Notes: a model not told the origin generated them from the sequence alone. A DNA stretch of 64,000 bases from Octopus bimaculoides (GCF_001194135.2 NC_068995.1:38015944-38079943); one strand, 5' to 3'. Numbered from the stretch's first letter, positions 1 to 33,012 are shown. Translations and numbers: made by a program.

Positions 1-51
<51 letters not shown>

Positions 52-740
52 CATATACACACAGAGCGTGCTTACATGCACACACACATGCATTCAAATA
101 CGTGAAGATGGACTTAGTCTTACTGTCGCAGTCAAGAAACTCATTTTGTGTGAATTTATTTAATAAATCTAGCAACAAACTTTAAAATATGTTAATTACT
201 CTTTTATAAATTTTCGTGACTGCTATATATTCGTTTGACACGATAACAGTATTAACTGTTGAGATTGTTCCTATAAGATCGTTTGTGGTTTGTTTAATAA
301 AATTATATTAAACGAGTGAATAAAATATCTTTAAAAAAATATTTGTCTACATCAGTTAATTTAGGAAGATAAGCCATATATTATTAACATGATGCTGCTG
401 CTGCTGATGATGATAGTGTTGATGATGCTGGTGAAGATGACGATAACGACGGAAATAATTACGAAATTAATATATTAAGTGAAAGTGTTAACTGTGATAA
501 GCATTATTTATGGTTTCTGAAGATCAAGTGATTATAATTTGGGTTATGAGTCAAAACCTCACGTGTACCTGTATGTATGCAATATATGTTGCAATGATAC
601 TTTGTTTTTTTATTCTGACTTCATCACTTTTTCACTTGTTTTCCTATGTCTTTTAACTCTCTGTCTAGTGTAAGATGCCTCCCTCTTTTAGCGTATGCTT
701 TATTTCAAACATTGTCATTTTGTACGCCTTCATCTTATGA

Positions 741-758
741 CTCACAGCTCTCTTCCAG
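741..758 (+). promoter_or_regulatory. Candidate 3' splice site of a 5'-UTR intron of CR paralog 1
   Basis: Branch-point-like CTCAC followed by a pyrimidine tract and CAG (ctcacagctctcttccag), about 580 nt upstream of the ATG. No transcript evidence. Confidence 0.3.
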
Positions 759-1335
759 GTGGCGAATTTATCATGTTATGTCACAGTCACGTATATATTT
801 GGAGAAATTCATTTCATAATTTCCGCAAAAGAAGGTCAACATTCATGCAGATGTCGGCGCTGGAATAAGCGAAAATTTCCTGAAATATAATAATTATAAA
901 ATAAGTGGGAAGATCTATTTGTAATTTAAAATATGTTAACAGACATAAAAATACCAACTAAATTCATGGAATTTATAAGATGAAGAAATGTGCGACCTTT
1001 TACGATAGCACATTTGGCAAATTCCCTTCAGATCAAGAATTTAGAATACATGTTTTATATATTACAATGAAATAAAGCAACATTTTAGACAAATCTGAAA
1101 TTGTATTCAGCAGGAAGATTTCCATTTCTTTTGTTTTCTATTGTAATAGACTAGAATTTATGTTATAATATATTTTGGTAACCTATTCAGTATCCAAAAA
1201 CATCAGATATATCATTCATCTCAGACAAAGAAGTGTAACGATTTATATACATACTTTAACAAATTTATATTCATGATGAAAAATTAAGCATAAACACTGA
1301 TCCGGACATAGATTGCCATATCAAAAAGCGTCTAA

Positions 1336-2538
1336 ATGTTTTTGTTAATACTATATCAAATGTTGGTACTGACTCCAAATATATTGATAACAAATTCTAA
1401 CCCTACGGAGGATGATGAAAGATTACTACACATCAAAATATTATCCAATTATAACAAATATATAAGACCGGTTATTGATTTGGAAACACCGGTCGATATA
1501 TATGCTACCATAATGCTTCACACATTCAATGATTTGGACTTAGTGAATAACGTACTGAGGGCTCAGTACTACATTGGACTACAATGGACTGATGAAAAGT
1601 TACGGTGGGACCCCTCGGATTATAATAACATTACAAATATTCATCTAGTAAAAGAAAATGCTTGGAAACCACCTATTGTATTATGCAATTCAATGGAAAA
1701 CTCAGAAGATAAAGATGACTTCCCTGAACTGTGGATTTTTAGTAATGGACATGTGGTTATGTATTCTTTTAGATTACTAAATACATATTGTGAAGTCAAC
1801 GCATATACTTATCCATTTGATAAGCATATGTGCGAAATTTACATGTGTGTTGCTTTGCATAGCGTACAGCACACAAGAATAAAAACTCTGGATTACCATG
1901 AGTTAAATTTTATACAAAACTATAAGTGGGATATCACGCTTGAAGGTACGGTAAATGCCACGAACGATAAATTTAACTACGCATTTGCGCCGATGTATAT
2001 ACGACGTAGAATTACCATAGAAGTCATAGCTATGCTGATTCCGTCAGTAATGATGACTGTTTTAACTATTTTCGTTTTCCTTCTACCTCCTGAATCTGGA
2101 AAGAAAGTTTTTCTTGCGATGACGACATTTTTATCAAACGTGTTGTATCTTGTTCAAATAGAGAAGACGACACCAAAAAATTCAAAATATCCTTGCCTTC
2201 TTATCTTATATTTAATGCTATTGTCGATGTTGAGTGGATTCACTGCAATTGGTTCGGTAATTATAAGCAGATTGTATGTAATTCAAACTTCTGATGGAGA
2301 GAAATCAAATTCACCAAATCAAAATAGAAAGAAATCCCATGCTAACCAAATTGCTGACGTTTCAATAATTGCCTCGGCACAATCGAATACATTTAATCCA
2401 GAAGAAAGGCCAAGAGCAAAATGGTTTTGCATATCCGACTACACTCGATGTGATGACATATTTCTAAGAATTAGCATTGTGATATCGGTAATAATTTCAT
2501 TAATATTTACATGTCTACTGTTTACTCATGATGACTAA
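1336..2538 (+). CDS. Atypical nicotinic-receptor-like Cys-loop channel subunit; cephalopod chemotactile receptor (CR) family, CRT1-like paralog 1 (400 aa, single coding exon)
   Basis: Uninterrupted ORF. N-terminal hydrophobic signal; LLxxILSNYNKxxRPV helix; WTDEKLRWDPSDY; WKPPI; Cys-loop C-x13-C (CEVNAYTYPFDKHMC); RRR before M1; M1-M2 linker LPPESG; M2 with 9' Leu (FLSNVL); M3; short M3-M4 loop; M4. No loop-C YxCC, no loop-B Trp, and Cys replaces the loop-A Tyr. Closely resembles octopus CR sequences as I recall them. Confidence 0.95.
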   Translation: MFLLILYQMLVLTPNILITNSNPTEDDERLLHIKILSNYNKYIRPVIDLETPVDIYATIMLHTFNDLDLVNNVLRAQYYIGLQWTDEKLRWDPSDYNNITNIHLVKENAWKPPIVLCNSMENSEDKDDFPELWIFSNGHVVMYSFRLLNTYCEVNAYTYPFDKHMCEIYMCVALHSVQHTRIKTLDYHELNFIQNYKWDITLEGTVNATNDKFNYAFAPMYIRRRITIEVIAMLIPSVMMTVLTIFVFLLPPESGKKVFLAMTTFLSNVLYLVQIEKTTPKNSKYPCLLILYLMLLSMLSGFTAIGSVIISRLYVIQTSDGEKSNSPNQNRKKSHANQIADVSIIASAQSNTFNPEERPRAKWFCISDYTRCDDIFLRISIVISVIISLIFTCLLFTHDD

Positions 2539-2934
2539 AAGAAAAGAATAACGAAGGTGTATCAGAATACAGCATGATATACATATTAATATCATGTATG
2601 GGCTTAGATGAAAAAATATCAGCCATATATATGGAGTGTTGTTTATCAAGTATTGTACTACTACTTCTGCCATTCTACTAGCACTAAAATACTGCAAATT
2701 ATTTACAGATATGTGAATATGACCATACACACAAGAACACAAATTGGGTGATTATTCTATATCTTGAAATAATTTATTAATTTATAAACAATGTATTCAC
2801 CCAAATCGACATATGACATGTAAAAGCAGTCTCATTATCTGAAAACAAAAAGACATCTGTAGGCATACATCCATACATACATTGAATTGATACATACCTA
2901 CATATATACATATATACATACATTTATATATACA

Positions 2935-2994
<60 letters not shown>

Positions 2995-3080
2995 TAGATA
3001 GATAGATAGATAGATGTGTGTGTATGAGGGACAAAGACACAAACACATATACGTTCAAATACACACACACAAACACATAA

Positions 3081-3228
3081 ACGACGAGCTTCTTTCAGTT
3101 TCCGTCGACTAAATTCTCTCATACGGCTGTGGTCGGCTCGAGGCGCAATACTAGAAGATACCCACGTTGCCAGGCGGTGGATCTCAACCCTGAAAGACGC
3201 GGTGAGGAAGTAATCGTCTAACCACACA
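3081..3228 (-). mobile_element. tRNA-derived SINE, family A (ends ...ggaaactgaaagaagcccgtcgt + microsatellite)
   Basis: Reverse complement matches copies at 7928-8066, 27761-27906 and 47101-47235. Confidence 0.75.
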
Positions 3229-3628
3229 GTGGCAATTTATACATGTACACATGTTTGTGTAAAGTTTGTTGACGGAAGGTAACATTAATTATTATTGGTA
3301 ATGACGACGATATTGAAAATAGCTTCCAAAGTGCAGCAAGATATGATGGTATTGCAAGAGTCAGGAGTTTTGCTAGGCCATGCCAGTTGCAGTTAATTTA
3401 TCACATGAACTAGTCAACTGACGGACACACATACATTTGTCATTATTCAGTTTTCTTTCAAGATTTCATGCCAATAAAGTGCTGTTTTGTAACCTAGATC
3501 CTTCATTGGAATTTCAACATCAACAGCAGCGTATTTTTATGCATATATGTATACGTGCAGATCTGTATGTTTTGTTTTATGTATGTCTTCTCATGCATAT
3601 ATTTGCATAACTAGAATGCTCCATATAC

Positions 3629-4640
3629 TTAAATGATAAACTGGAAAGTTTTACAGATTTTTACAGTTCCAGTGATGGATTGGATCAGTAGTCTTCGAAT
3701 CAGCTTTCTACTTTCTGGTTTTGAGAATGCTAATCTCTCAATATTGATAATTTGGCAGTGTATTAAATATCCCAATATTACAATATAAACCTGAACTTGT
3801 AATCTGGTTCGAGTATCTGTAGATTTATTAATAGTTCAACGTATTCTCTTTTTCACTGATGTTAACATCACAGTTTGTCCTCTCTATCCCAAATCAATAT
3901 ATCAGGAATATTGTTTTTACACGTTATTACGGTTTTCAATGGGACATTCCACCTGTATTCCTTTTTATTGCGTGGCTATGACTTCCACCATACAGTGAGC
4001 TCTTATTTCTTTGTTCTCTGCGTTATCCTTTTGACAGATCTCGTTATAAAGAGTCGTAGTTACAGCATCGTGTCTCATAGGTATATCATATCGTGATGAT
4101 ATATTTGGACAACTGCTTATGATGTGGGTGATATCTTCGGTGTTAACTCCATAAAGTTTGCATAGGCTGTCAAATGTTACTACTTTTCCTGTATCTCAGT
4201 CCCTATTGTGCATCGGGTATTTGGTTGATATTTCTTGTTCCTGGATTGCAAACGTATACTCCTGAAAGTGGGAGGTAGTAGTTGGATTTTTGGACCATGA
4301 TAAACTGCTTTGATGATCAATTTTACTATCAACTCGGAGCCTTCCACTAACATATCCATGCATGGACTTCTGCTCATATACGCTCATAATTTTACCTGAT
4401 GATATGTTCCGATAGACTCGTGTATCTTCTCTAGGCAATTACCTAAGGCTATCAGAGATGGAATATTGCTCAAGCAGCTGCTTTCCGCGTCTAATGAAAA
4501 CTATCATTGGTGAAGGGATGCACTTAGAGATTTGCTGGGATACACATCGACACCTGGTGGTAATAAGATGTTGCCGAAGGGATATGATACGACTGCTTTG
4601 TTTTCGCTTCAGTTATAGATCGTCTACGACACTGATGATG
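3629..4640 (-). mobile_element. 3' part of a decayed non-LTR retrotransposon with restriction-like endonuclease (R4/Dong-like)
   Basis: Minus-strand translation gives the RT-thumb VDDL*LKRKQ, HFQEYTFAIQEQEISTKY, a CCHC-knuckle remnant (LCKLYGVNTEDITHIISSCP...RHD), an RLE motif (WNVPLKT...NIPDILIWD) and C-terminal QSITGTVKICKTF*. Contains stops and frameshifts; homology may continue to about 5150. Confidence 0.75.
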
Positions 4641-31818: not shown

Positions 31819-33012
31819 ATGATGTCAAAACAATATTTTGTGATTCTGATACCGGTTATATCGATAGTAATTTCGTGCCCCACGTACAAGGATGAAACAT
31901 TATTACAAGCAACTTTATTATCTAATTATAACAAAGGTGTGAGGCCTGTTATTGATTTATCTACAACTATCAATATCGAAGCTGCTTTATTTCTTCACAC
32001 ATTCTATGGTCTGGACTTTGTAAATAATATAGTTACAGCTCGGTACGACTTTAGTCTAGAATGGACTGACGAACTTCTGACTTGGAATCCTCTAGACTAC
32101 AACAACATTACAGTTATATACATAGAAAAAGATAAGCTGTGGACACCAGAAATCGTAATGTGCAATGCAATGAAGGAATCAGAAGAGAAAGGTAGCTTTC
32201 TTGAAGTAAAGGTTTTTAATAATGGACGTGTACAAATGCGGTCACTAAAACTGCTGAAATCCTATTGCACATTTGATGCTTACGCCTATCCATTTGACCA
32301 GCATGACTGCGAAATATACATTTGCGTTGCTTTGCATGATCCTGTCCATACAAGAATAAGAACACTTACATATGATAATTTAAATTATTCCCCAAACTAT
32401 AACTGGGACATCGACTACAATGGTATAAAAAATGCTTCCGACCAGAGATTCAGCGTCGTATTTGCTCCATTGCATTTACGACGTAGACTCACAATAGCTA
32501 TTGTAGCTATGCTGATTCCAACAATAATGATGACTATTTTGACTATATTTGTCTTCCTTCTACCTCCAGAATCAGGGGAAAAAGTTTCTCTAGCTACGAC
32601 AATATTTTTATCAAACGTTTTGTATCTTGTTGAAATCGAGAAAACTACACCGAGGAATTCCAAATTTCCTCCACTTCTTATGACATACTTGATGCTATTA
32701 TCACTTTTAAGTGGTATCGCAACACTTGGGTCGGTGATTATATGCAAGTTGTATGTCATTCAGTCATCTGATGAAAAGACATCGAACCTCCCAGATCAAA
32801 CAACAAACAAATCTCGAAGCAACAAAATTGCGGATAGTTCAACAATTACCACGAGAGAGAACGATCCCGTAACTTTGAACTCAAAATCAAATACGAAAAC
32901 TAAATTTTGTATAACCGAATATTTCCGACTTGATGAGACATTCCTGAAAATTAGCATTATAACAACAGTAATAATTTCAATATTATTTACTTCTTTCTTG
33001 TGTACACAATAG
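31819..33012 (+). CDS. Atypical nicotinic-receptor-like Cys-loop channel subunit; cephalopod chemotactile receptor (CR) family paralog 2 (397 aa, single coding exon)
   Basis: Uninterrupted ORF with signal peptide, LLSNYNKGVRPV, WTDELLTWNPLDY, WTPEI, Cys-loop CTFDAYAYPFDQHDC, LPPESGEKVSL M1-M2 motif and four TM segments; lacks YxCC. Aligns almost gap-free with 1336-2538 (hand count: about 54% identity in the ectodomain, about 74% over M1-M3). Confidence 0.95.
   Translation: MMSKQYFVILIPVISIVISCPTYKDETLLQATLLSNYNKGVRPVIDLSTTINIEAALFLHTFYGLDFVNNIVTARYDFSLEWTDELLTWNPLDYNNITVIYIEKDKLWTPEIVMCNAMKESEEKGSFLEVKVFNNGRVQMRSLKLLKSYCTFDAYAYPFDQHDCEIYICVALHDPVHTRIRTLTYDNLNYSPNYNWDIDYNGIKNASDQRFSVVFAPLHLRRRLTIAIVAMLIPTIMMTILTIFVFLLPPESGEKVSLATTIFLSNVLYLVEIEKTTPRNSKFPPLLMTYLMLLSLLSGIATLGSVIICKLYVIQSSDEKTSNLPDQTTNKSRSNKIADSSTITTRENDPVTLNSKSNTKTKFCITEYFRLDETFLKISIITTVIISILFTSFLCTQ

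What the first reader, a model, noticed from the sequence alone, without database searches (positions are those of the whole stretch)
2101..2112. Paralog 1 has a charge-reversed selectivity filter (-1' Glu>Lys) and a bulky 2' Phe
Seen: paralog 1 reads PPESG-K-K-V-F-LAMTTFL (AAG at 2101-2103, TTT at 2110-2112), while paralog 2 reads PPESG-E-K-V-S-LATTIFL. Established: the -1' glutamate ring (GEK) is the main determinant of cation selectivity and Ca2+ permeability in nAChR and 5-HT3 receptors, and 2' lines the narrowest part of the pore. Inference: this subunit may be anion-permeant or non-selective, Ca2+-impermeable, non-conducting, or a modulatory or inhibitory subunit that retunes heteromeric CRs. 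That would be an unusual way to encode sign or signal type in a chemosensory system. The ORF is otherwise intact, which argues against simple decay.
Basis: partly seen in the sequence, partly recalled or inferred. Interest (0 to 1): 0.8.

Follow-up and report, generated by a model that had tools for sequence, protein, structure and literature searches.

The report
Octopus taste receptor with charge-reversed pore
An intact octopus "taste-by-touch" receptor gene next to the well-studied CRT1 carries a lysine where all its relatives have the glutamate that lets cations and calcium through. The change is conserved in three octopus species, so it is real and probably retunes or silences ion flow, but its effect has not been measured.

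Summary
Window 1336-2538 (+) is an intact 400-aa intronless chemotactile receptor (CR) gene of Octopus bimaculoides. AAG at 2101-2103 encodes Lys256 at M2 position -1'. TTT at 2110-2112 encodes Phe259 at 2'. Paralog 2 (31819-33012) reads the canonical GEKVS.

It is not an assembly error or a rare allele. The same AAG and TTT codons occur in the O. sinensis ortholog and in a third octopod. The ORF is under purifying selection. All 21 other octopus CRs examined have Glu at -1' and Ser or Thr at 2'. None of the other 149 closest representative relatives has Lys at -1' or Phe at 2'.

The gene is the immediate downstream tandem neighbour of CRT1 in both O. bimaculoides and O. sinensis. Only five residues define its lineage, and two of them are these pore positions. 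Its M1-M3 channel domain evolves several times faster than that of CRT1.

The functional interpretation is untested. My preferred mechanism is an accessory subunit in heteromers that lowers conductance and Ca2+ permeability. Anion permeability, a silent subunit, or no effect remain open. I found no expression or electrophysiology data for this gene.

Verdict: a real, conserved new variant of a known receptor kind, of moderately high interest.

The parts
1336..2538 (+). Paralog 1: an intact, intronless chemotactile receptor (nAChR-like pentameric ligand-gated channel subunit) gene of 400 aa. It is the immediate downstream tandem neighbour of CRT1.
   Evidence: The ORF is. Pfam Neur_chan_LBD scores 1.3e-31 and Neur_chan_memb 7.5e-11. 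The best PDB sequence hit is CRT1 (9e6b/8eis) at E about 1e-157. The AF2 model matches 8eis_A with TM 0.96 and rmsd 1.5 A. CRT1 ends 2.6 kb before window base 1.
2098..2169 (+). M2 pore-lining helix, residues 255-278, covering -2' to 21'.
   Evidence: The AF2 secondary structure gives a helix at 255-278. The lumen-facing residues 6' T, 9' L, 13' L, 16' V, 17' Q and 20' K are identical to CRT1.
2101..2103 (+). AAG = Lys256 at M2 position -1' (the intermediate ring, or selectivity-filter position). Other CRs have Glu here (GAA in CRT1 and in paralog 2).
   Evidence: Searches show the same AAG in O. sinensis and in the Logan octopod. One search shows E in 21 of 21 other octopus CRs. One search shows that none of the other 149 sequences in the alignment of closest representatives has K. 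One search gives the CRT1 codon.
2110..2112 (+). TTT = Phe259 at M2 position 2'. Other CRs have Ser or Thr here (TCT in CRT1 and in paralog 2).
   Evidence: Searches show the same TTT in all three orthologs. One search gives S in 19 and T in 2 other CRs. One search shows that none of the other 149 sequences in that alignment has F.
2092..2094 (+). GAA = Glu253 at -4' (the cytoplasmic ring), retained in paralog 1. The local charge pattern is therefore E(-4') K(-1') K(0').
31819..33012 (+). Paralog 2: a canonical CR gene of 397 aa, 56% identical to paralog 1. It reads GEKVS, with Glu at 32578-32580 and Ser at 32587-32589, and has Glu at 17'.

Best explanation
Paralog 1 is a functional, selectively maintained chemotactile receptor subunit. 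It is the tandem neighbour of CRT1 and, by sequence identity, CRT1's group is its closest paralog.

Before at least three octopod species diverged, its lineage fixed one nonsynonymous transition at each of two neighbouring lumen-facing M2 positions. One changed Glu to Lys at -1' (GAR to AAG). The other changed Ser to Phe at 2' (TCT to TTT).

Inferred mechanism. The subunit is unlikely to work as a normal Ca2+-permeable homomeric cation channel. Five Lys at -1' on top of five Lys at 0' would turn the strongly negative potential of the intermediate ring positive. Five Phe at 2' would narrow and dewet the tightest part of the pore.

It most likely co-assembles with canonical GEK subunits; CRT1 is the obvious candidate. 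One or two copies per pentamer would cut the ring charge from -5 to -3 or -1 and add bulk at 2'. That would lower single-channel conductance and especially Ca2+ permeability. In this reading it acts as a Ca2+ limiter or signal tuner for a given ligand-binding complex.

Shown: the sequence facts, conservation, selection and synteny. Inferred: heteromeric assembly and every permeation effect.
For: The codons are real and ancient.
- AAG and TTT are identical in O. bimaculoides, in O. sinensis (XP_029646616.2) and in a third octopod (Logan SRR11869390; the same protein sits on 3 contigs).

The gene is under purifying selection.
- Whole-gene dN/dS is 0.39-0.62. It is below 1 at p = 5e-6 and 6e-9 against the distant species.
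- In a neutral simulation, 0 of 2000 ORFs stayed open at d >= 0.2.

The change is lineage-defining.
- Only 5 sites are fixed in the lineage and absent from the other CRs: F69L, E256K, S259F, S287C and T304A.
- The rest of the lumen-facing M2 residues are identical to CRT1.

Constraint on the channel domain has changed.
- M1-M3 dN/dS is 0.15-0.42, against 0.02-0.06 in CRT1 and 0.07 in paralog 2.
- Fisher tests give p = 0.0006-0.007.

The gene is adjacent to CRT1 in two species. The predicted fold is intact.

Literature read here.
- The ring potential is -230 mV with four Glu and rises by 57 mV per negative charge removed.
- A receptor with one E-to-K subunit still gives currents, while a zero-charge ring gives almost none.
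- The narrowest part of the pore runs from -2' to 2' (PMC2217203).
- alpha7 E237A abolishes Ca2+ permeability, and beta2 acts as a Ca2+ limiter through Lys at 20' (PMC5447003).
- CR subunits combine into diverse multimeric complexes (bioRxiv 10.1101/2025.03.03.641191).
Against: - There is no evidence of transcription, of protein, of co-expression or co-assembly with CRT1 or any other CR, or of any current.
- The exact protein is on record only on the NCBI genome assembly (with an N-truncated UniRef model); no Logan (public sequencing run) assembly carries it.
- The faster evolution of M1-M3 could equally reflect partial loss of channel function.
- CRT1 is about equally similar (56-61%) to many other CRs, and the planned tree was lost with the script machine. 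The sister relationship is therefore not demonstrated.
- Side-chain orientation and protonation of a Lys at -1' cannot be predicted from sequence.
Confidence: 0.45

Rival explanations
1. The subunit forms anion-permeable or non-selective channels, either as homomers or as heteromers containing several copies. A chemotactile ligand would then drive a Cl- conductance, reversing or shunting the signal at the receptor.
For: - The charge at -1' can set the sign of selectivity. A single A-1'E converts the glycine receptor to cation selectivity.
- Deleting the -2' Pro leaves the glycine receptor still anion-selective.
- Anion-selective pores are narrower than cation-selective ones (PMC2233820). Both K-1' and the bulky F2' push in that direction.
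- K-1' and K0' together give a doubly positive cytoplasmic mouth.
- Anion-selective nAChR-type channels are said to exist in molluscs (cited in PMC13174522).
Against: - The canonical anion motif, Pro(-2')-Ala(-1')-Arg(0'), is not present. Position -2' is Gly and the M1-M2 loop has the same length as in cationic CRs.
- From my own knowledge, removing the -1' Glu alone did not make alpha7 anion-selective.
- Five Phe at 2' may leave no conducting pore at all.
- Glu at -4' and an acidic residue at the CRT1 E104 vestibule position are retained.
Confidence: 0.2
2. The subunit is non-conducting. It would act as a silent or dominant-negative partner, or as a ligand-binding or trafficking partner, that lowers or gates the output of other CRs without passing current itself.
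For: - A zero-charge intermediate ring already gives almost no current in muscle nAChR.
- A ring of Phe at the narrowest point is expected to be hydrophobic and occluding (inference).
- M1-M3 constraint is relaxed relative to sister CRs.
Against: - M2 is still strongly conserved within the lineage. All lumen-facing residues are invariant across three species.
- M1-M3 dN/dS stays well below 1, which argues that the pore still matters.
Confidence: 0.15
3. The substitutions have little net effect on permeation. This could happen if the Lys side chain points away from the lumen, is deprotonated, or pairs with Glu253 or Phe259. It could also happen if the AAG codon is recoded to Glu (IAG) by cephalopod A-to-I editing, so that the protein is often canonical.
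For: - From my own knowledge, side chains at -1' can adopt alternative rotamers, and lysines in pores show strongly shifted pKa values.
- AAG to IAG reads as Glu, and cephalopods recode extensively (own knowledge).
Against: - Two adjacent lumen-facing positions changed together and then stayed fixed, in an otherwise nearly invariant M2.
- The local RNA fold around the site is no more stable than shuffled sequence, with z = +0.26. This gives no support for a local ADAR substrate.
Confidence: 0.12
4. The feature is an assembly or sequencing artefact, or the gene is a decaying pseudogene.
For: - The window contains 17 N-gaps totalling 5,391 N.
- An older gene model for this gene is N-terminally truncated to 341 aa.
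Against: - The codons are identical in two further independent assemblies.
- All three ORFs are intact at 400 aa.
- dN/dS is significantly below 1, and the neutral simulation excludes an open ORF at this divergence.
- The predicted fold is canonical.
Confidence: 0.02

Closest known systems
Octopus chemotactile receptor CRT1 (CR518; PDB 8EIS, 9E6B)
   Same: - The same family and fold: 60% BLASTP identity, and Foldseek TM 0.96 to 8eis_A.
- Both are intronless, and the two genes sit next to each other in the same orientation.
- The M2 lumen residues from 6' to 20' are identical.
- Paralog 1 keeps an acidic residue at the position of CRT1's E104 vestibule ring.
   Different: - CRT1 has Glu at -1' and Ser at 2', works as a homomer and is highly Ca2+-permeable. 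Paralog 1 has Lys and Phe at those positions.
- Several ligand-pocket residues differ: L37T, Y39M/I, W122Y and L191K/E.
- The M1-M3 region of paralog 1 evolves about 4-20 times faster in dN/dS terms.
Charge-modifying accessory subunits of heteromeric nAChRs (beta2/beta4 with Lys at 20'; muscle gamma/epsilon with Gln at -1')
   Same: A subunit that contributes a non-acidic or basic residue to a charged ring of M2, and so lowers Ca2+ permeability or conductance of the heteromer (PMC5447003; PMC2217203).
   Different: The natural cases I know neutralise the -1' ring (Gln) or place Lys at the outer 20' ring. A natural Lys at -1' was not seen in any of the other 149 closest representative relatives. 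No heteromer containing paralog 1 has been shown.
Anion-selective Cys-loop receptors (GlyR, GABA-A, GluCl, nematode ACC/LGC, molluscan anionic nAChRs) with the P-A-R motif
   Same: They lack the -1' acidic residue and have a basic residue at 0'. Their constriction is narrower than in cationic channels (PMC2233820; PMC9962794).
   Different: Paralog 1 reads G-K-K, not P-A-R. It has no Pro at -2' and no change in loop length. It carries a positive charge at -1' itself, and it has Phe at 2' where those channels have Gly, Ala, Pro, Thr or Val (the 2' residues of anionic channels are from my own knowledge).
Engineered intermediate-ring mutants of muscle nAChR (betaE252K; Imoto 1988, Wilson et al. 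2000)
   Same: The same position and the same substitution, Glu to Lys at -1', within one subunit of a pentamer.
   Different: Those are laboratory mutants. betaE252K gave unstable currents. Here the substitution is natural, is conserved across species, and is coupled to S2'F.

Membership tests
[quoted passage not shown] | An extracellular ligand-binding domain plus four transmembrane helices, with matches to the Pfam Neur_chan_LBD and Neur_chan_memb families. | tested here: met
   PF02931 scores 1.3e-31 (110 bits against a cutoff of 26) and PF02932 scores 7.5e-11 (43 bits against 28). The AF2 model has a beta-sandwich plus helices M1 228-249, M2 255-278, M3 288-324 and M4 369-397.
[quoted passage not shown] | The Cys-loop: two cysteines separated by 13 residues. 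| tested here: met
   C152 and C166 (YCEVNAYTYPFDKHMCEIY). Both columns are at least 90% conserved across the 150-sequence alignment.
Cephalopod chemotactile receptors (CR clade of nAChR-like genes) | Closest similarity to characterised CRs (CRT1, CRB1) rather than to neurotransmitter nAChRs. | tested here: met
   PDB search: CRT1 at E about 1e-157, CRB1 at 2e-42, and 5-HT3A and alpha7 at about 1e-31. Foldseek rank 1 is 8eis_A and rank 2 is 8eiz_A.
Cephalopod chemotactile receptors (CR clade of nAChR-like genes) | An intronless coding sequence in a tandem CR cluster. | tested here: met
   A single uninterrupted ORF at 1336-2538. CRT1 lies 3.9 kb upstream and paralog 2 about 29 kb downstream, all on the + strand.
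Cephalopod chemotactile receptors (CR clade of nAChR-like genes) | Loss of the loop-C vicinal cysteines of ACh-binding alpha subunits. | tested here: met
   There is no CC pair anywhere in the extracellular domain, residues 23-226 (read directly).
Cephalopod chemotactile receptors (CR clade of nAChR-like genes) | Expression in sucker sensory epithelium, and gating by poorly soluble ligands. | not testable with these tools
   No transcript or functional data could be reached. The exact protein is on record only on the NCBI genome assembly (with an N-truncated UniRef model); no Logan (public sequencing run) assembly carries it.
Cation-selective nAChR/5-HT3-type selectivity filter (G-E-K/R) | An acidic residue (Glu or Asp) at -1'. 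| tested here: not met
   Lys256 is encoded by AAG at 2101-2103. The other 21 octopus CRs all have Glu.
Cation-selective nAChR/5-HT3-type selectivity filter (G-E-K/R) | A small polar residue (Ser, Thr or Gly) at 2'. | tested here: not met
   Phe259 is encoded by TTT at 2110-2112. The residue at 2' is S, G, T or A in 139 of the 150 aligned sequences, and F only in the query.
Anion-selective Cys-loop receptors (P-A-R filter) | Pro at -2' (an insertion relative to cationic channels) and a small neutral residue at -1'. | tested here: not met
   Position -2' is Gly and -1' is Lys. The M1-M2 loop has the same length as in the GEK CRs.
Anion-selective Cys-loop receptors (P-A-R filter) | A basic residue at 0', with no acidic residue at -1'. 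| tested here: met
   Lys257 is at 0' and Lys256 at -1'.
Anion-selective Cys-loop receptors (P-A-R filter) | A measured PCl greater than Pcation. | not testable with these tools
   This requires electrophysiology.

The most novel reading that the evidence does not exclude
A naturally charge-reversed selectivity filter gives octopus an anion-permeable or otherwise sign-changing chemotactile receptor complex. Contact chemicals could then inhibit or shunt a sensory cell as well as excite it, directly at the receptor.

A further speculative twist is that the genomic AAG could be edited to IAG (Glu). The filter would then become a switchable K/E site, analogous to the Q/R site of GluA2.
Probability: 0.18. 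Interest if true: 0.85.

Novelty: new variant of a known kind. Interest (0 to 1): 0.6.

Why it matters
CRs are a recently discovered sensory receptor family. So far, their diversification has been explained almost entirely by changes in the ligand pocket. CRT1's Ca2+ permeability is treated as part of how the signal is encoded.

A conserved subunit beside CRT1 with a Lys at the position that sets cation conductance and Ca2+ permeability would point to a second axis of diversification: the ionic output of the channel.

It is also, as far as I could see, a rare natural experiment. A -1' Glu to Lys reversal in a nicotinic-type pore has otherwise been studied only through mutagenesis.

It is directly testable with tools already used for CRT1: oocyte or HEK recordings, ion substitution, cryo-EM, and in situ hybridisation.

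Tried and rejected
- **Assembly error or rare allele: rejected.** Orthologs carry the same codons.
- **Pseudogene: rejected.** See dN/dS and the neutral simulation.
- **More orthologs or other KKVF proteins: none found.** A full-length search and a profile search of the 5.8-billion-protein index found only the three orthologs. An O. vulgaris ortholog is not in the collection.
- **Species of the third ortholog: not identified.** The runs are SRR11869384-94, and the accessions appear in no held paper.
- **Primary CR papers: not held.** This covers van Giesen 2020 (PMC7605239), Allard 2023 (PMC10228259), Kang 2023 (PMC10262778), the Current Biology primer (PMC11055638) and van Nierop 2005 (PMC6725845). 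I therefore cannot say whether those authors already noted this subunit. The MolluscaGenes preprint says only that the CR clade shows "mixed ion selectivity patterns", and no supplement is held.
- **Expression evidence: none obtained.** The exact protein is on record only on the NCBI genome assembly (with an N-truncated UniRef model); no Logan (public sequencing run) assembly carries it.
- **RNA-editing idea: no support.** The local fold has z = +0.26.
- **Upstream non-coding conservation: not informative.** The whole locus aligns at 88% to O. sinensis and 79% to the third species, flanks included.
- **Neighbour-joining tree with bootstrap: not obtained.** It was meant to test whether paralog 1 is sister to CRT1, but the script machine was lost. 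Identities alone are ambiguous.
- **Pfam on the ORF at 59675-60181: no hit**.

Full report
**1. What is in the sequence**

The window is Octopus bimaculoides chromosome sequence. Window base 1 corresponds to CM046615.1:38015944 in GCA_001194135.2. It holds two intronless ORFs on the + strand that encode nicotinic-receptor-like subunits.
- Paralog 1 is at 1336-2538 and is 400 aa long.
- Paralog 2 is at 31819-33012 and is 397 aa long.
- The two are 56% identical.

Both match the Pfam families Neur_chan_LBD and Neur_chan_memb.

The best solved-structure match of paralog 1 is the octopus chemotactile receptor CRT1 (9e6b/8eis, E about 1e-157). Squid CRB1 follows. 5-HT3A and alpha7 come only after that, at about 1e-31.

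An AlphaFold2 monomer model has mean pLDDT 78 and the canonical fold. It superposes on 8eis_A with TM 0.96 and rmsd 1.5 A.

**2. The observation**

Bases 2086-2169 translate to PPESGKKVFLAMTTFLSNVLYLVQIEKT. AAG at 2101-2103 is Lys256. TTT at 2110-2112 is Phe259.

Paralog 2 reads PPESGEKVSL at 32563-32592. CRT1 uses GAA and TCT at the two sites.

With K257 taken as 0' and the conserved Pro at 23', Lys256 falls at -1' and Phe259 at 2'. The model places both inside the M2 helix, residues 255-278.

**3. Is it real, and is it unusual?**

*The same codons occur in other species.* The O. sinensis ortholog (XP_029646616.2, 87% identical) and a third, unidentified octopod carry GGA AAG AAA GTT TTT, the same codons. 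The third species comes from Logan whole-genome runs around SRR11869390. Its protein is 74% identical, and the exact protein sits on three contigs. This rules out an assembly error and a private allele.

*The residues are unique within the family.*
- Among 21 other octopus CR sequences, -1' is Glu in 21 and 2' is Ser in 19 and Thr in 2.
- M2 is nearly invariant from -6' to 15' across those sequences.
- In the 150-sequence alignment of the query with its closest representative clusters from a 1.84-billion-protein library, -1' is E in 142 and D in 2. Position 2' is S, G, T or A in 139.
- Only the query has Lys at -1' or Phe at 2'.

*The changes define the lineage.* Only five positions are fixed in the three orthologs, at least 85% conserved as another residue elsewhere, and never seen in other CRs. 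They are F69L, E256K, S259F, S287C and T304A. Two of the five are the neighbouring lumen-facing positions -1' and 2'. The other lumen-facing M2 residues (6', 9', 13', 16', 17', 20') are identical to CRT1 and invariant within the lineage.

**4. Selection**

| Comparison (Nei-Gojobori) | Paralog-1 lineage | CRT1 orthologs | Paralog-2 orthologs |
|---|---|---|---|
| Whole-gene dN/dS | 0.39-0.62 | 0.33-0.41 | 0.30 |
| M1-M3 dN/dS | 0.15-0.42 | 0.02-0.06 | 0.07 |

- Against the distant species, dN/dS in the paralog-1 lineage is below 1 at p = 5e-6 and 6e-9.
- In a neutral simulation, 0 of 2000 copies of the ORF stayed free of stop codons at d >= 0.2, and 1% did at d = 0.107.
- The gene is therefore maintained by purifying selection.
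- The difference in M1-M3 between the paralog-1 lineage and the other two is significant. Fisher tests on nonsynonymous against synonymous differences give p = 0.0006-0.007.
- After the pore changes, constraint on the channel domain was relaxed or redirected, but it was not lost.

**5. Context**

The gene 3.9 kb upstream of paralog 1 is CRT1 itself. It ends 2.6 kb before the first base of the window, and it matches the structural construct at 399 of 399 residues before the tag. The same head-to-tail arrangement is found in O. sinensis.

Paralog 1's best non-orthologous matches are the CRT1 group, at 60-62% against 57% or less for other CRs. However, CRT1 is about equally similar to many CRs. 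A formal tree could not be finished because the script machine was lost. A sister relationship is therefore plausible but not shown.

At CRT1's ligand-pocket positions, paralog 1 differs at L37T, Y39M/I, W122Y and L191K/E. It keeps Y58, F124, C150, A152, L153 and F192. It also keeps an acidic residue (Asp or Glu) at the E104 vestibule ring, which tunes CRT1's Ca2+ permeation.

**6. Mechanism**

Established from papers read here:
- The -1' intermediate ring dominates the pore's electrostatic potential. [quoted passage not shown]
- That potential correlates with conductance.
- A receptor with a single E-to-K subunit still gave ACh currents, although unstable ones. A ring with zero charge gave almost none (PMC2217203).
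- alpha7 E237A abolishes Ca2+ permeability, and beta2 acts as a "Ca2+ limiter" through a ring lysine (PMC5447003).
- In the glycine receptor, A-1'E alone flips charge selectivity, and pore diameter co-determines it (PMC2233820).

Inference:
- A homopentamer with ten lysines at -1' and 0' and five Phe at 2' is unlikely to be an ordinary cation channel.
- One or two copies in a pentamer with GEK subunits would reduce the ring charge from -5 to -3 or -1 and add bulk at the constriction.
- That would lower conductance and Ca2+ entry.

I rank this accessory-subunit model first, at about 0.45. Below it come:
- an anion-permeable or non-selective channel, about 0.2;
- a silent or dominant-negative subunit, about 0.15;
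- little net effect, including possible K-to-E recoding by A-to-I editing, about 0.12;
- artefact or pseudogene, about 0.02.

For the anion model, the canonical P-A-R motif is not met: the sequence is G-K-K with an unchanged loop length. Both changes do push in the anion direction, through positive charge and a narrower pore.

For the editing idea, the 300 nt around the site fold no better than shuffled sequence, with z = +0.26.

**7. What is known and what is new**

The gene is annotated. NCBI holds a 400-aa model, named by homology for the O. sinensis ortholog as "acetylcholine receptor subunit beta-type acr-2-like". It is presumably one of the 26 CRs counted in the literature.

In the papers I could read, nobody singles out a Lys at -1' or a Phe at 2'. 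A 2026 preprint says only that the CR clade shows "mixed ion selectivity patterns" (PMC13174522). The three primary CR papers are not held, so prior notice by those authors cannot be excluded.

I classify the finding as a new variant of a known kind: a CR subunit with a naturally charge-reversed, sterically altered selectivity filter.

**8. Limits**

- There are no expression, assembly or permeation data.
- The third species is unidentified.
- The phylogeny is unfinished.
- Only three species were sampled for the lineage.

Noticed in passing
Just upstream of the window: L011 4838-6070, which is CM046615.1 about 38012116-38013348. It ends 2,595 bp before window base 1.: The gene immediately upstream of paralog 1 is CRT1 itself, matching the PDB construct at 399 of 399 residues. 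The CRT1-then-paralog-1 order and orientation are conserved in O. sinensis.
   Followed up: yes
window 32626-32628 (paralog 2, M2 position 17'): Paralog 2 and six other octopus CR sequences carry Glu at 17' (VEIEK), where CRT1 and paralog 1 have Gln. This is a second natural charge polymorphism in the CR pore that could also tune cation or Ca2+ permeation.
   Followed up: partly
P0050 (UniParc UPI0006957214, 335 aa; not in the window): A CR-like relative, 27% identical, reads PPDT-K-Q-K-V-T-F. It has Lys at -2', Gln at -1' and Lys at 17'. It is another family member without the -1' Glu. The model appears to lack M4.
   Followed up: partly
window 1336-1512 (first 59 codons of paralog 1): A UniRef model of this gene (P0002, 341 aa) starts at Met60 and lacks the signal peptide and the start of the extracellular domain. 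The full 400-aa ORF from 1336 is conserved in both orthologs. In the third species the called start is also 12 codons too short.
   Followed up: yes
window 32428-32727 (M1-M2 coding region of paralog 2): As RNA, this stretch folds much more stably than shuffled sequence (z = -2.69; 1 of 200 shuffles folds as well). The equivalent stretch of paralog 1 does not (z = +0.26). It could be a local mRNA structure, for example an editing substrate, or it could be chance.
   Followed up: no
window 6349-60630 (17 runs of N): There are 17 assembly gaps totalling 5,391 N. Many are flanked by (TA)n, (GA)n or (CA)n microsatellites. They create many spurious long ORFs of X residues in the ORF list.
   Followed up: no
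window 59675-60181 (+): A 168-aa ORF with no Pfam match (E <= 0.01). Its sequence looks to me like a degraded transposase N-terminus, but this is unverified.
   Followed up: partly
window 29-4110 against L001; window 694-2908 against L002: The whole paralog-1 locus, flanks included, aligns collinearly at about 88% to O. sinensis and about 79% to the third octopod. Non-coding flanks are nearly as alignable as the coding sequence.
   Followed up: partly
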